DNA from: Adineta vaga
Taxonomy: Eukaryota > Animalia > Rotifera
Direction: 5' to 3'
Length of the DNA: 64,000 nt
Assembly (NCBI GenBank): GCA_021613535.1
Contig: CP075495.1
Span: forward strand, 6,076,001 to 6,140,000
The first letter of the stretch is position 1; every line of letters begins with the position of its first letter. The notes beneath the pieces are model-generated. The model was not told where the DNA came from. It worked only from the letters and a program-made list of their open reading frames with translations, and searched no databases. Positions 20,128-23,575 of this stretch are shown here, one piece after another. Made by a program: the position numbers and the translations under genes.

Positions 20128-23100
20128 TCATTGTCTTCCGTCTTCGTTGGGATTTTCATAAAAGAAAAAAGCACCATCACGAAATAAACGTAATTGTCGC
20201 ATGCCGTGTTCATCAAACTTTTGCGATGTAGGTCTTGCTTGTCGTCGACGATCGTCCAAACTAGTAAAAAAATGATCTGTATCTCGTTCGGCATCATCAA
20301 TCCATTGTTCAAAATCTGGGACTCTATCCACAAGAGGTATATTCTGTTCATCATACTTTCGATCACTCATACTATCAAAAAATAACCATTGATGTTGTTG
20401 TACACTACGATTTTGACATCTAACGAAAGCAACATAATAACTTGTTTCAATACATAATACAGCGAACAAATTCAGTTTATGTTTCTTAATATCAATTTTG
20501 CGTAAATCATGACTATGCCATGTATCAGATGATGATGATGGATGTAAATCTTTTCTTAGACATTTGTTACAGTAACATACTATTGTAGCTTCAGTTGTTG
20601 GTCTAATATTCGATTCTTTTGAATAACAGTCAGAACAGAAAAAGAAATCACTCGGAGTTGTTTTATCATGATTTGTTTCGTTGCATCGAAGACACACTAA
20701 TTGTACAATATCATTATCAAGAGTGATTTGTCGATCAGGTATGATATAACGATATGAACGTTGTGAGAGTGTACGACGCGGTGACATCAATACAAGAAAA
20801 GGTGGAATCATTGCTAGTTTAGCTGGAATTTCCGAAAGTGAGTTACGAAAAATACTTGCAATATTTGTTGATGGTAAATTAAATGGATTAGCATCAAACA
20901 TTTCCCCTGTTAGAAACAAAATGAAAAAAATTTAAATCTCAAATGAATACTAAGAATAAACTAGACTTACAAATAATATTTGTTGTGATATTTGATCCAT
21001 CTGGTTTCGGTGATTGGTCAGGTACGATAGTTTTGAGTGGAGAAAAACTAAAAAGCTGTTCAAAGGATCGTAAAAATTCACTTGGATCATTTTCCATCTC
21101 TTTGAATGATGAATCATGCGTAGCTTCACTTAGTTGAGCACGAAGATGGAAAAGAGCATCACCTACTCATACAAAGATATTCTTTGAAACAAGAAACAAG
21201 TTCTGACATGATCATACGTTTAACAAAACCGTTGTTCTTATCACGAAGTACATAAACAATGTTCTCACGTAATATTGTTTGTAGTTTTTGTACTTCAGTT
21301 GATCGAACATCCATGTGTAATAGACTATCAAATATATCATTGTAAGCAAACATGCAGAAGATGGTTGCATCCATGTAGCATGAATTAGAGTCCCCTTCGA
21401 TACCTTTGTTTTTGCCTAATATTGGTTGATCAAGTGGAGGTAAGTTATTTTTCACAGTAGGTAGTTGATCAGTTGTTATTCGACCTTTTAAACGTTCATT
21501 ATTTAGCTTTTGCTTTTGTACATGATCATGAATACTTGTGACCGAAGCATAAAATCCTCTATTTGCGTTATTGAATACCACATGCATCTGATTACATTTA
21601 GGACAGTGTCCACTGTATCCTCTTATTGGTCTTTCACTTTCTAATGCATACAAATTTTCTGTACCACACAAAAACTTTCCTTTGATACAACACTGTTGAT
21701 CATTCAGTAGAATTGTTTTACCAATTAAATTTGTCTGGTTAGATATTTCACCGGTACCATTTGTATCAATAGGTCCTTTAGGGAAATTTATTGAGTAAGG
21801 TAAAACTTTAAAGATCAAGAAAAAGAATTCTGTTACCTAATGATTTCGATGTTTGAGTCAATGTTGGACCGCTTGGACGAGAATAGGCAGGTGCTCCTAG
21901 AATGACAGTTGTTAGTTGATTTGATGTTTCAAAGTCTTTTATATGGAAACGTTTTTTCATTGTCGCAAATAGACCACTCATACATGTTCAGATGGCAATC
22001 GTAGTTAGTAACCTTTTGTTTATATTTTATCTCTTTGTTAGGATGATATATTAGATTGATACAAGAATTTTTATGAGTAAATAAGAAAAAACTGATTACT
22101 CTAATTTCGTCGACAATCGCTTTTACAATTATTTCATGTTGAATACTCAATATATATTAGATTATGGTAACAATTACCAATTACATCCAGTCACAGTGAA
22201 AAGAGGTTATATTATAAGACATTAACTGATATTATATTTCTACTTTTATGTATTTATACATACCATTCAAATTTTCACGATACTGTGAAATGGTAGCTTC
22301 AGGTGACTTCGATGAAAATGTGTCTAAATAGAAATTATTCACACAAGAATTAGATCATATGAAACTCGGATATTTTATGCTAGTATAATGCATCTCATAC
22401 ATTATCTGTCTTAGTTCTTCTTTTCTAAATATTGACCTTATATTAAAAAACATACTTGATTTCGGTACCTCTGTTACACCTTGATATAGCTGTTCACGAA
22501 AAAGATTTCTTAGCTGATTGAATGTTAGTCTTTCCTTTGGTGATATAGCCCACGTTTTAATTATAATATTCCAGTATTTTGGACTACAGTTTGGCGGTTG
22601 CGGTAGAATATCACCATTTCGTACTCGGCGAACCACTTCATCATCATTTTGAATATTTGTCCAAGGTATTGTTCCTCGTGAATATGCCTCCCACATTAAA
22701 ACACCCATTGAATACACATCAGATTTTTCTGTACAATCACTCGATGATGTATTTGATGAAAGAATTTCTGGTGCGCAATATCGTTTTGGTATAATATTTA
22801 ATACTGTTCCTGCAGAAGTGACAGTTTGACTATAAATTTTACTGTAATGACTAAGTCCAAAATCTGTTATTTTCACTACAATATTTCTTGGATCGTTTTG
22901 ATCAAAACGAAATATAAGTACATTACGACATGCTAAATCACCATGAACCACATTATTCAATGCTAGATAACTCATTGCATCGATAATCTGCAGAAATATC
23001 TCTAGTAGAATTTTCTCTTCAAGCGGTTTTCTTTGTTCGGTTAACAATTCATAAAAACTACCTTCAGATGCATATTCTTGCAATAACATAATAGAACTTC

Positions 23101-23575
23101 CATCATCATCATCATCATCAGTACGTACTAGACCATACGTTCGAACAATATGTGGATGGCGGCTTAAATCAACATAGAATGAAGCTTCTTTATTTGCTCG
23201 AGCACCATCAATTTTTAATAATACTATTTCTGGACGACTATCACCAGTTGGCAACCATTCTGCATGATAGATAGTTTTTCCAGTAGTTTGAAACAATGGT
23301 CGACCTTTCTTCTTTTTAACATCGACGTCAAGTGTATAATGGAAATTCTTAGTTCGAGATGATGACTCGAATCTATCGATCACTTTCTTTATGGCATAAT
23401 TTGGGACTAAATGTTCCAATGATATTCCTTGACGAGTCATAGGGCTTGCACCATATCTTTGTATCCATTCTTCAATAGCTTTTCTCTCATATGTATGACC
23501 ATCTTGTGCTACAACTGGATCACGAAACATTTCGAGAGTAATGGGACATGTTAATGGATCCTCTGGCGTTTTCAT
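20128..23575 (-). CDS. Fusion protein: U-box + tyrosine-kinase-like domain + CYLD-type USP domain, predicted 922 aa in 6 exons
   Basis: Exons 23575-22456, 22323-22264, 21896-21837, 21775-21218, 21162-20971, 20906-20128 total 2769 nt, all GT-AG phase-1 junctions, no stops. U-box CPITLEMFRDPVVAQDGHTYERKAIEEW; kinase HGDLACRN/DFG/APE/SDVYSMG; CYLD motifs NSCYMDAT, ENDPSEFL, LFAVLCIETSYYVAFV, WLFFDSMSDR. Confidence 0.82.

What the first reader, a model, noticed from the sequence alone, without database searches (positions are those of the whole stretch)
20128..23575. Single gene fusing a U-box E3 ligase, a tyrosine-kinase-like domain and a CYLD-type deubiquitinase
Seen: the ORF track shows three separate ORFs, but two 60-nt micro-exons (22323-22264 and 21896-21837, donors GTATGT and GTAACA) link the U-box/kinase exon in frame to the CYLD exons. 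All five introns are phase 1 and the CDS is 2769 nt (922 aa) without stops. Known: U-boxes add ubiquitin, CYLD-family USPs remove K63/M1 chains in innate immune signalling, and CYLD normally carries CAP-Gly domains rather than a kinase or ligase. Inference: an exon-shuffled ubiquitin writer/kinase/eraser-or-reader signalling protein, possibly immune-related. I do not know this architecture from characterised proteins.
Basis: partly seen in the sequence, partly recalled or inferred. Interest (0 to 1): 0.85.

Follow-up and report, generated by a model that had tools for sequence, protein, structure and literature searches.

The report
Rotifer U-box–kinase–CYLD fusion gene
In the rotifer Adineta vaga, a ubiquitin ligase domain, a kinase and a CYLD-type ubiquitin-removing domain that lacks a catalytic residue probably form one gene, as predicted in other bdelloid rotifers, but no RNA evidence could be obtained.

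Summary
All five introns are phase 1 and have canonical splice sites.

Exon 1 encodes a U-box plus a tyrosine-kinase-type domain. The remaining exons encode a diverged CAP-Gly-like domain plus a CYLD-type USP. The genome is Adineta vaga.

The public A. vaga annotation calls only a standalone 558-aa CYLD-like gene here (UJR26358.1). Orthologues in Adineta steineri (910 aa) and Rotaria socialis (912 aa) are annotated as single fused genes with the same all-phase-1 exon plan.

Supporting points:
- All CYLD-linked kinases form one 100/100 clade across genera.
- The exon-1 donor is conserved at the same codon in six loci.
- Micro-exon 2 has a homologue in A. steineri with both splice sites.

The CYLD part is kept similar to a standalone paralogue 390 kb away by gene conversion. 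It has nevertheless gathered 23 derived amino-acid changes against 6, including catalytic His to Tyr.

I put a single fused gene at about 0.65. The layout is a new variant of known kinds. It exists as unnamed database predictions, and I found no paper describing it. The scan noted other U-box–kinase genes in this genome, but not this fusion elsewhere.

The parts
22456..23575 (-). Exon 1 (1120 nt, ATG at 23575): U-box plus tyrosine-kinase-type domain. It ends at a phase-1 donor, CAA|GTATGT.
   Evidence: Pfam. Donor conserved at the same codon in 6 orthologous loci. If the intron is not spliced, the frame runs on to a stop at 22355 (406-aa ORF).
23360..23557 (-). U-box domain (aa 7-72).
   Evidence: PF04564, E 9.7e-18, 64.5 bits against a cut-off of 21.4. 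Signature residues are invariant across 26 family members.
22505..23194 (-). Protein kinase domain (aa 128-357), tyrosine-kinase type. It is non-RD (HGDLACRN), and the Gly-rich loop is replaced by GRPLFQTTGK.
   Evidence: PF07714, E 2e-49. Best PDB matches are EGFR, FAK, CSK and BTK. K121, D213, N218, DFG 238-240 and APE are invariant or nearly so in the family.
22324..22455 (-). Proposed intron 1 (132 nt, phase 1). It contains the stop of the unspliced ORF at 22357-22355.
   Evidence: In relatives the sequence after the donor is unconserved and of variable length.
22264..22323 (-). Micro-exon 2 (60 nt, phase 1, no ATG). Acceptor TTTCTATTTAG, donor GTATGT.
   Evidence: Homologous to a 66-nt exon of A. 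steineri, with acceptor and donor retained and a length difference of 6 nt (blastn E 2e-6; exon 4018-4083 of L007). Whether it is included in the mRNA is not shown. Skipping it also keeps the frame.
21897..22263 (-). Proposed intron 2 (367 nt). It holds ATG 21981 and ATG 21960, which read in frame into micro-exon 3. ATG 21981 is the start of the public 558-aa model.
   Evidence: These ATGs have no counterpart in A. steineri or R. socialis. The stretch ends with a CTAAC branch-like motif, a pyrimidine tract and AG.
21837..21896 (-). Micro-exon 3 (60 nt, phase 1): a proline/serine-rich linker unit.
   Evidence: Corresponds to exon 2 of the standalone paralogue (L003 5015-5074) and to the 60-nt micro-exons of A. 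steineri.
21218..21775 (-). Exon 4 (558 nt): CAP-Gly-like domain with a Cys3His site, followed by the start of the USP domain with the catalytic Cys box (Cys546, codon 21380-21378).
   Evidence: Same 558-nt exon in A. steineri. Match to 2vhf residues 5-67. Cys box reads GDSNSCYMDAT.
21480..21737 (-). Diverged CAP-Gly-like domain with invariant Cys/Cys/Cys/His (fused-model residues 450, 471, 474, 478).
   Evidence: AlphaFold2 model, pLDDT 85-90 over the core. The top 39 VIA-align rows are all CAP-Gly domains, with CYLD CAP-Gly3 7owc at Z 8.3. Foldseek prob 0.85-0.99. Invariant columns. Pfam CAP_GLY is not detected.
20971..21162 (-). Exon 5 (192 nt). It has a tandem NAGNAG acceptor; the alternative start is at 21165.
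   Evidence: The 192-nt size is shared with A. steineri and R. socialis. The public model of this copy uses 21165. Homologues fit 21162.
20128..20906 (-). Exon 6 (776 nt plus stop): second half of the CYLD USP with the B-box-like Cys/His insert. Tyr820 (codon 20439-20437) stands where the catalytic His should be. Asp841 is at codon 20376-20374.
   Evidence: Match to 2vhf residues 161-350; the alignment shows ETSyYVAF against ETSHYVAF. All 13 outgroup sequences with a residue there have His. Codon coordinates.
20147..21899 (-). Tract shared with the standalone paralogue at G000:C2:5.70 Mb (96.6% nt identity, about 98% in the middle including two identical introns, decaying at both ends): a gene-conversion or duplication tract.

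Best explanation
This is the Adineta vaga orthologue of a bdelloid-rotifer gene that joins four modules in one reading frame. An N-terminal U-box (E2-recruiting ubiquitin ligase module) and a tyrosine-kinase-type, non-RD protein kinase sit in exon 1. One or two short linker exons connect them to a CYLD-type module made of a diverged, zinc-binding CAP-Gly-like domain and a USP domain with a B-box-like insert.

Shown here: the domains, the open phase-1 splice path, the orthologous fused gene models, the conserved donor, and the loss of the catalytic His.

Inferred:
(1) The exon-1 donor is spliced to the linker exons, so one 902-922-aa protein is made (micro-exon 2 may be optional).
(2) The U-box-kinase half is the active effector. 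Its catalytic residues are conserved family-wide.
(3) The CYLD half in A. vaga no longer cleaves ubiquitin chains. It acts as a ubiquitin-chain or partner-binding module that directs the ligase/kinase to ubiquitinated complexes, as NHL, LRR, PARP-like, PDZ or ankyrin modules would do in sister genes.
(4) The CYLD half is repeatedly overwritten by gene conversion from the standalone CYLD-like gene of the same genome.
For: - Domains.
- Splice path and phases.
- Fused single-gene models with the same all-phase-1 plan: A. steineri (P0271, 910 aa, CAF1431148.1 / UniRef100_A0A819XJB2; also P0330, P0348, P0151, P0274, P0278) and R. socialis (P0281, 912 aa, CAF3613586.1; a second annotation series gives CAM4908911.1).
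- The kinase halves of all CYLD-linked genes form a 100/100 clade across Adineta and Rotaria. It excludes A. vaga's own other paralogues.
- The kinase-to-CYLD order and orientation were also found in Rotaria sp. Silwood2 (L019) and an ENA contig (L021). The spliced R. sordida model P0153 shows it too.
- The phase-1 donor N|GTATGT or GTAGGT sits at the same codon in six loci. A GT in the same phase and place occurs in more distant family members. Sequence and tail length after it are unconserved.
- Sister genes continue from exactly this point into NHL, PARP-like, LRR or PDZ domains. One contig carries U-box-kinase-LRR as a single uninterrupted ORF.
- Micro-exon 2 has no ATG but keeps its acceptor, open frame and donor, and is homologous to an A. 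steineri exon.
- A. steineri L008 and R. socialis L010 offer no in-frame ATG directly upstream of the linker exons.
- Flanking synteny was lost in A. vaga while the kinase-CYLD linkage was kept.
Against:
- The public A. vaga annotation was built with RNA-seq, PASA and ab initio callers (PMC8494291). It gives a standalone 558-aa CYLD-like protein from ATG 21981 (UJR26358.1).
- Unspliced, exon 1 gives a plausible 406-aa protein.
- Introns 1-2 (132 + 367 nt) are long for this genome and could be a former intergenic spacer with its own promoter.
- The A. steineri homologue of micro-exon 2 contains in-frame ATGs. It is more diverged between A. steineri copies than its flanks are.
- Rotaria sp. Silwood2 and R. 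magnacalcarata annotations call the kinase alone.
- The fused models elsewhere may be ab initio joins.
- The CYLD half evolves under relaxed constraint: dN/dS about 0.56, and 23 derived changes against 6.
Confidence: 0.65

Rival explanations
1. There are two adjacent, separately expressed genes. One is a 406-aa U-box-kinase ending at the stop at 22355. The other is a 558-aa CYLD-like gene starting at ATG 21981, as in the public annotation, or an SL-trans-spliced downstream gene of a two-gene unit. On this view the in-frame splice path is a by-product of all CYLD introns being phase 1.
For: - The NCBI model UJR26358.1 equals the ATG-21981 model.
- Most database relatives of the kinase are 370-405 aa.
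- The standalone paralogue and the orthologues in other species are about 555-572-aa proteins with their own ATG exon.
- A 560-nt gap is more like a spacer than a bdelloid intron.
- The A. steineri homologue of micro-exon 2 carries ATGs.
Against: - ATG 21981/21960 and the 28 residues that follow have no counterpart in any other species, and they lie in a stretch that looks like an intron 3' end.
- The many 370-405-aa relatives end in unconserved read-through tails just after a conserved GT. Most of them come from metagenome sources (JGI, ENA, Logan), and uninterrupted ORFs such as L021 and L023 show no intron modelling there.
- This reading does not explain why the donor, its phase and the linkage are conserved across genera while neighbouring genes were shuffled.
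- No separate A. vaga protein model for the kinase part was found in the collection.
Confidence: 0.25
2. Only the U-box-kinase is a working gene. It either ends in intron 1 or splices to micro-exon 2 and reads on 10 codons to a stop. The CYLD part is a decaying partial duplicate that survives only because gene conversion keeps refreshing it.
For: - The window copy lacks the ancestral first exon and the last 6 codons.
- It carries 23 derived substitutions against 6 in the paralogue. Several are at positions invariant elsewhere, including the catalytic His.
- Kinase-linked copies elsewhere lost the catalytic Cys (A. steineri P0271, P0151, P0278) or the whole USP core (L019, P0337).
Against: - 549 codons stay open across five splice-compatible exons.
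- dN/dS is about 0.56 overall and about 0.4 in the interior (hand count from the table), which is not neutral.
- Intact kinase-linked CYLD parts persist in A. steineri (P0348, P0274) and R. socialis (P0281).
- Even the deleted forms keep the CAP-Gly-like domain and C-terminal tail in frame. That suggests selection on a non-catalytic role rather than plain decay.
Confidence: 0.1

Closest known systems
Human CYLD (three CAP-Gly domains plus a USP with a B-box; PDB 2vhf, 7owc)
   Same: The USP halves align to 2vhf (E 3.3e-11 and 2.1e-9), with the Cys box GDSNSCYMDAT, the FFDS Asp and a Cys/His-rich insert at the B-box position. A CAP-Gly-fold domain lies directly N-terminal of the USP, as CAP-Gly3 does in CYLD (Z 8.3 to 7owc).
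   Different: It has one CAP-Gly-like domain, not three, and that domain lacks a Pfam CAP_GLY match and carries an extra invariant Cys3His site. The catalytic His (H871 in human numbering, from memory) is Tyr. A U-box and a kinase are attached N-terminally. Of 49 long CYLD-type representatives from elsewhere, none has a U-box or a kinase.
Unnamed fused predictions in other bdelloids: A. steineri CAF1431148.1 / UniRef100_A0A819XJB2 (910 aa) and R. socialis CAF3613586.1 / UniRef100_A0A818NYA3 (912 aa)
   Same: They have the same domain order, the same all-phase-1 exon plan and an orthologous kinase (79% and 70% identity).
   Different: The R. socialis copy keeps both Cys and His. A. steineri P0271 has Cys to Thr but keeps His. 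A. vaga keeps Cys but has His to Tyr. The A. vaga copy also has a new C-terminal end and has lost its old downstream neighbour. None of these proteins is characterised.
Bdelloid U-box-kinase family with other C-terminal modules (NHL, PARP-like, LRR, PDZ, ankyrin)
   Same: They share the N-terminal U-box plus non-RD TK-type kinase, with the junction at the same point after the kinase.
   Different: The C-terminal module here is a CYLD-type CAP-Gly plus USP. The kinase belongs to a separate, well-supported clade.
Plant U-box kinases (PUB class with kinase plus U-box), recalled from memory and not tested
   Same: A protein kinase and a U-box lie in one polypeptide.
   Different: In plants the kinase is N-terminal and of the RLK/Pelle type, the U-box is C-terminal, and there is no deubiquitinase module. 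There is no evidence of common origin.
A20/TNFAIP3-type ubiquitin-editing enzymes (DUB plus E3 activity in one protein), recalled from memory
   Same: The concept is shared: ubiquitin-adding and ubiquitin-removing or ubiquitin-binding modules in one chain.
   Different: A20 uses an OTU domain and zinc fingers, not a U-box and USP, and it has no kinase. The resemblance is functional analogy only.

Membership tests
U-box E3 ligase domain (PF04564) | Profile match above the curated cut-off | tested here: met
   E 9.7e-18, 64.5 bits against a cut-off of 21.4, aa 7-72.
U-box E3 ligase domain (PF04564) | Conserved core residues of the fold across relatives | tested here: met
   C10, P11, P20, V21, D25, T28, Y29, I34, I38 and P45 are invariant in 26 family members. 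E2 binding and ligase activity were not tested.
Protein kinase, tyrosine-kinase type (PF07714) | Profile match, and closest solved relatives are tyrosine kinases | tested here: met
   E 2e-49. EGFR, FAK, CSK, BTK and ITK are the top PDB hits.
Protein kinase, tyrosine-kinase type (PF07714) | Catalytic residues: beta3 Lys, catalytic Asp and Asn, DFG, APE | tested here: met
   K121, D213, N218, D238-F-G and P269-E270 are present and invariant or nearly so in the family.
Protein kinase, tyrosine-kinase type (PF07714) | Canonical GxGxxG ATP loop and HRD arginine | tested here: not met
   The loop reads GRPLFQTTGK (P93, F95, G99 and K100 invariant). The catalytic loop reads HGD, so it is non-RD. Activity is therefore plausible but unproven.
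CYLD-type USP deubiquitinase | Sequence homology to the CYLD USP domain | tested here: met
   2vhf E 3.3e-11 (exon 6) and 2.1e-9 (exon 4). Pfam UCH is below threshold on single exons and weak on whole relatives.
CYLD-type USP deubiquitinase | Catalytic Cys in the Cys box | tested here: met
   GDSNSCYMDAT, Cys546, codon 21380-21378.
CYLD-type USP deubiquitinase | Catalytic His in the His box | tested here: not met
   Tyr820 (TAT, 20439-20437) stands where human CYLD and all 13 bdelloid homologues with a residue there have His. The domain is homologous to CYLD, but this copy should not be filed as an active deubiquitinase.
CYLD-type USP deubiquitinase | Cys/His-rich B-box-like insert inside the USP | tested here: inconclusive
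   The insert has Cys and His residues at the aligned place. Canonical CYLDs show invariant Cys and His residues there. No structure of this part was predicted.
CYLD-type USP deubiquitinase | CAP-Gly domain(s) N-terminal of the USP | tested here: inconclusive
   There is a fold-level match to CAP-Gly domains, including CYLD CAP-Gly3 (Z 8.3; 39 top rows). There is no Pfam or sequence match. The model's mean pLDDT is 72.8.
Single fused gene (one transcription and translation unit) | Transcripts spanning the exon 1 / linker / exon 4 junctions | not testable with these tools
No transcript-derived protein was found in the collection.
Single fused gene (one transcription and translation unit) | Conserved splice-compatible structure and linkage in related genomes | tested here: met

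The most novel reading that the evidence does not exclude
Bdelloid rotifers own a lineage-specific family of U-box-kinase signalling enzymes whose C-terminal recognition module is swapped by phase-1 exon shuffling. The swapped modules include CYLD/CAP-Gly, NHL, LRR, PARP-like, PDZ and ankyrin. The CYLD-bearing member would be a self-contained ubiquitin writer-kinase-reader. Its dead or dying USP recognises K63/M1 chains or a CYLD partner. It is kept in step with the active standalone CYLD by gene conversion, so it may act as a decoy or sensor of the CYLD pathway.
Probability: 0.3. Interest if true: 0.7.

Novelty: new variant of a known kind. Interest (0 to 1): 0.55.

Why it matters
If the fused protein is made, it places a ubiquitin ligase module, a kinase and a CYLD-type chain-binding or chain-cutting module in one chain. 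In mammals these activities meet only as separate proteins in NF-kB and cell-death signalling complexes.

It would be a natural experiment in what a CYLD domain does once catalysis is lost. Three independent kinds of loss appear in the kinase-linked copies: His to Tyr, Cys to Thr, and deletion of the USP core.

The locus is also a clear case of concerted evolution between a fused and a free copy of the same domain in an asexual animal.

Finally, it flags a probable annotation problem. Many 370-405-aa bdelloid 'U-box kinases' in the databases appear to be first exons read through a conserved donor.

Tried and rejected
- Exact look-ups of the 406-aa ORF and of single exons found nothing in the protein collection. 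The look-up of encoding contigs on P0001 returned no record, because records of the window's own genome are left out.
- A search for transcript-derived fragments crossing the junctions, using P0001:1-200, returned only exon-4 ORFs from genomic and metagenomic contigs.
- Pfam on single CYLD exons gave nothing. A sequence search of the CAP-Gly-like region against the PDB gave nothing. Only the fold search identified that domain.
- Flank synteny of the window with the A. steineri and R. socialis loci is absent. I first read the paralogue as a recent partial duplication that created the fusion. I dropped that reading once the orthologous kinase clade and the species-wise clustering of the CYLD parts pointed to an old fusion plus gene conversion.
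- Poly(A) hexamers judged by eye are uninformative in DNA with 30% GC.
- Literature searches (bdelloid + U-box + kinase; CYLD + rotifer; CYLD + His871) found no description.
All searches used single exons by reference or stored database proteins.
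Full report
WHAT IS IN THE SEQUENCE

The window is G000:C2:6076001-6140000 of a 100.8-Mb genome in six contigs with about 30% GC. A database protein identical to part of the locus is 'hypothetical protein I4U23_007691 [Adineta vaga]', on a contig of 16,274,841 bp. That is the length of G000:C2. The genome is therefore the bdelloid rotifer Adineta vaga.

On the minus strand, ORF 23575..22355 (406 aa) carries two Pfam domains:
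- a U-box (aa 7-72, E 9.7e-18);
- a PK_Tyr_Ser-Thr kinase domain (aa 128-357, E 2e-49).

Its nearest solved relatives are tyrosine kinases: EGFR, FAK, CSK and BTK. Downstream ORFs match the USP domain of human CYLD, PDB 2vhf. Exon 4 aligns with the Cys box (E 2.1e-9). Exon 6 aligns with the second half, including the His box (E 3.3e-11).

- Exons are 1120, 60, 60, 558, 192 and 779 nt. They sum to 2769 nt, or 922 aa, with no internal stop.
- All five introns are phase 1 and measure 132, 367, 61, 55 and 64 nt.
- All acceptors are AG.
- Donors are GTATGT, GTATGT, GTAACA, GTATGA and GTAAGT.

I used the joined model only for this bookkeeping and for locating codons. Every search used single exons by reference or stored database proteins.

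ONE GENE OR TWO?

Evidence for two genes:
- The public A. vaga annotation holds a 558-aa standalone model, UJR26358.1. It starts at ATG 21981 and reads straight through the acceptor of micro-exon 3. That annotation was made with funannotate from RNA-seq/PASA, GeneMark and Augustus (PMC8494291).
- Unspliced, exon 1 gives a 406-aa protein.
- The gap between the kinase exon and micro-exon 3 is 560 nt, which is long for this genome.

Evidence for one gene is comparative, and I find it stronger.

(a) Fused single-gene models exist in other bdelloids.
- A. steineri: P0271 and P0330 (910 aa), P0348 (897 aa), and partial models P0151, P0274 and P0278.
- R. socialis: P0281, P0331 and P0340 (912 aa), and CAM4908911.1 (590 aa) from a second annotation series.
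- R. sordida: the partial model P0153 splices the kinase into the CYLD linker.

(b) Mapping those proteins back to their contigs gives the same plan.
- A. steineri: exons 1117/60/60/558/192/743.
- R. socialis: exons 1114/99/564/192/767.
- All introns are phase 1, with a long first intron of 579 and 688 nt respectively.

(c) In a maximum-likelihood tree of the U-box-kinase halves, every CYLD-linked gene from Adineta and Rotaria falls in one 100/100 clade. That clade excludes the other A. vaga paralogues and the NHL-, PARP-, LRR- and PDZ-linked relatives. Two further loci in that clade also have CYLD sequence downstream on the same strand: Rotaria sp. Silwood2 (L019) and an ENA contig (L021).

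(d) The exon-1 donor lies at the same codon and phase in all six loci examined: CAA|GTATGT, CAA|GTATGT, TAA|GTATGT, CAA|GTAGGT, CAA|GTATGT and CGA|GTATGT. What follows it is unconserved and of variable length. This is the signature of an intron, not of a C-terminal tail. More distant family members keep a GT in the same phase and place. Eukaryotic gene models of those members continue from that point into NHL, PARP-like, LRR, PDZ or Cys-rich regions. One Logan contig has U-box-kinase-LRR as a single uninterrupted 579-aa ORF.

(e) Micro-exon 2 of A. vaga has no ATG, and an in-frame stop lies upstream of it. It still keeps an acceptor, an open phase-1 frame and a strong donor. It is homologous to a 66-nt exon of A. 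steineri, with both splice sites retained and a length difference of 6 nt.

(f) ATG 21981/21960 has no counterpart in A. steineri L008 or R. socialis L010. There, in-frame stops lie 25-70 nt upstream of the linker exons and exon 4, with no ATG between.

(g) The linkage outlived the loss of neighbouring synteny. The NRF/acyltransferase gene that follows the fused gene in A. steineri and R. socialis lies 383 kb away in A. vaga.

Caveats:
- The A. steineri homologue of micro-exon 2 contains in-frame ATGs and is less conserved between A. steineri copies than its flanks are.
- Some annotations (Rotaria sp. Silwood2, R. magnacalcarata) call the kinase alone.
- The fused models elsewhere may themselves be ab initio joins.
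- Inclusion of micro-exon 2 is not needed for the fusion. Joining 22456 directly to 21896 also keeps the frame.

I put the single-gene reading at about 0.65.

THE CYLD HALF

A. vaga has one other CYLD-like copy, I4U23_007570 (UJR26227.1, 562 aa), at C2:5.70 Mb on the opposite strand. It has its own ATG exon and no kinase upstream. It sits in the WD40 - CYLD - adh_short - ZER1-like neighbourhood also seen in another Adineta-type genome. It is the ancestral standalone gene.

Homology with the window runs only from 21899 to 20147.
- Overall nucleotide identity is 96.6%.
- The interior is about 98% identical, including two identical introns.
- Identity falls to 73% over micro-exon 3.
- Homology ends 6 codons before the ancestral stop.

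CYLD parts cluster by species, not by architecture: A. vaga window with its paralogue, and A. steineri fused copies with standalone copies. Their kinases, in contrast, are orthologous across genera. The simplest reading is an old fusion whose CYLD part is repeatedly overwritten by gene conversion from the standalone copy. In A. steineri the two genes lie on the same 10-40-kb contigs.

Since the last homogenisation, the window copy has accumulated 23 derived amino-acid changes against 6 in the paralogue. Its tree branch is four times longer, and dN/dS is about 0.56. The changes include substitutions at positions invariant in all other sequences.

The key change is Tyr820 (TAT, 20439-20437) at the catalytic His position. 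That position is H871 of human CYLD, a number I recall from memory; a literature check found nothing. The catalytic Cys (Cys546) and the Asp of FFDS are kept.

Kinase-linked copies elsewhere show other losses:
- Cys to Thr in A. steineri P0271, P0151 and P0278;
- deletion of the whole USP core in Rotaria sp. Silwood2 and in R. socialis CAM4908911.1, with the N-terminal domain and C-terminal tail left in frame.

Other copies keep both catalytic residues (P0281, P0348, and P0274 as far as it reaches). Deubiquitinase catalysis therefore seems dispensable in the fused context.

The roughly 130 residues before the USP are conserved in all bdelloid CYLD-like proteins. They carry an invariant Cys-x20-Cys-x2-Cys-x3-His pattern.

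An AlphaFold2 model of this part has a mean pLDDT of 72.8, with 85-90 over the core. It matches CAP-Gly domains almost exclusively. The top 39 VIA-align rows are all CAP-Gly domains. Human CYLD CAP-Gly3 bound to ubiquitin (7owc/7owd) scores Z 8.3/8.2, and Foldseek probability is 0.85-0.99. There is no Pfam or sequence-level match.

The module is therefore 'CAP-Gly3-like plus USP', a minimal CYLD, and not a bare USP.

THE KINASE AND THE U-BOX

Across 26 family members, these kinase residues are invariant or nearly so:
- the beta3 Lys;
- the alphaC Glu;
- the His, Asp and Asn of the catalytic loop, which reads HGDLACRN in this copy;
- DFG;
- APE.

The HRD Arg is Gly, so this is a non-RD kinase. 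The Gly-rich loop is replaced by a conserved GRPLFQTxGK.

The U-box core residues are invariant. Both modules look functional. No activity was tested.

HOW IT PROBABLY WORKS (INFERENCE)

The N-terminal U-box-kinase is the conserved effector of a bdelloid-specific family, and the C-terminal module sets the target. In this member the target-setting module is a CYLD-type CAP-Gly plus USP. In A. vaga that module can no longer hydrolyse chains. It most likely binds K63/M1-type ubiquitin chains or a CYLD partner. That would bring the ligase and kinase to ubiquitinated complexes, making a writer-kinase-reader rather than a writer-eraser. An immune role is a guess by analogy with mammalian CYLD.

COMPARISON WITH WHAT IS KNOWN

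I Pfam-scanned 49 long CYLD-type proteins taken from the best 150 hits of a search over 1.84 billion representatives. Forty-four have CAP-Gly domains, three have Death domains and one has a C3HC4 RING. None has a U-box or a kinase.

The full text of about 8.4 million papers and preprints held no description of a bdelloid U-box kinase or a rotifer CYLD.

The architecture is therefore undescribed in the literature I could search. It is not new to the databases, since unnamed UniRef entries in A. steineri and R. socialis carry it.

Earlier notes of this scan flagged other U-box-kinase genes in the same genome (s1-498780, s1-505593) and CYLD-derived pseudo-deubiquitinases elsewhere on this chromosome (s1-482841). 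None noted this fusion on other DNA.

VERDICT

A single fused gene is likely (0.65) but has no RNA proof.
- This copy is a homologue of CYLD but fails the catalytic-His test, so it should not be called an active deubiquitinase.
- It is a new variant of known kinds, of moderate interest.

Noticed in passing
G000:C2:5703.8-5705.8 kb (L003:4835-6783, + strand): The standalone CYLD-like paralogue I4U23_007570 (562 aa) has its own ATG exon and an intact catalytic His. It lies between a WD40 gene and an adh_short gene, as in another Adineta-type genome (L004). It is the apparent donor of the gene-conversion tract in the window.
   Followed up: yes
G000:C2:5712210-5713277 (-), L022: The NRF/Acyl_transf_3 gene directly follows the fused gene in A. 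steineri and R. socialis. In A. vaga it lies 383 kb from the window gene and only about 6.5 kb from the standalone CYLD copy. No kinase or CYLD remnant lies beside it. A rearrangement breakpoint seems to coincide with the altered 3' end of the window gene at 20147.
   Followed up: partly
L019:7740-8107 (Rotaria sp. Silwood2) and P0337 (R. socialis CAM4908911.1): These kinase-linked CYLD copies have the whole USP core deleted in frame. Only the CAP-Gly-like domain and the conserved C-terminal tail remain.
   Followed up: partly
window 21162-21167: Exon 5 has a tandem NAGNAG acceptor (gAGtAG). The public model of this copy uses 21165, which adds one residue. The paralogue's model and all homologues fit 21162.
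   Followed up: yes
L012:2222-3178 (G000:C5:16.66 Mb) and L014:2144-3568 (G000:C6:10.10 Mb): Other A. vaga U-box-kinase paralogues have an NHL-propeller ORF and an ankyrin-repeat ORF 0.8 kb downstream on the same strand. For L012, a phase-1 GT lies at the same place as in the window gene. Many 370-405-aa database 'U-box kinases' look like first exons read through this donor.
   Followed up: partly
L023 (Logan contig SRR26974992_98004), 1875-3614: U-box, kinase and LRR lie in one uninterrupted 579-aa ORF in an unidentified bdelloid-like organism. This family member has no intron at the junction.
   Followed up: no
P0029 and members of alignment A4: Outside bdelloids, some CYLD-type USPs are combined with three Death domains (P0029 and two others), and one with a C3HC4 RING finger. 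I did not identify the organisms.
   Followed up: no
L008:2568-2766 (A. steineri): The 60-nt linker micro-exon and its 46-nt intron are tandemly duplicated as a 106-nt unit with identical flanks (gtttctttag ... gttat). This gives two PSYY-type linker exons.
   Followed up: partly
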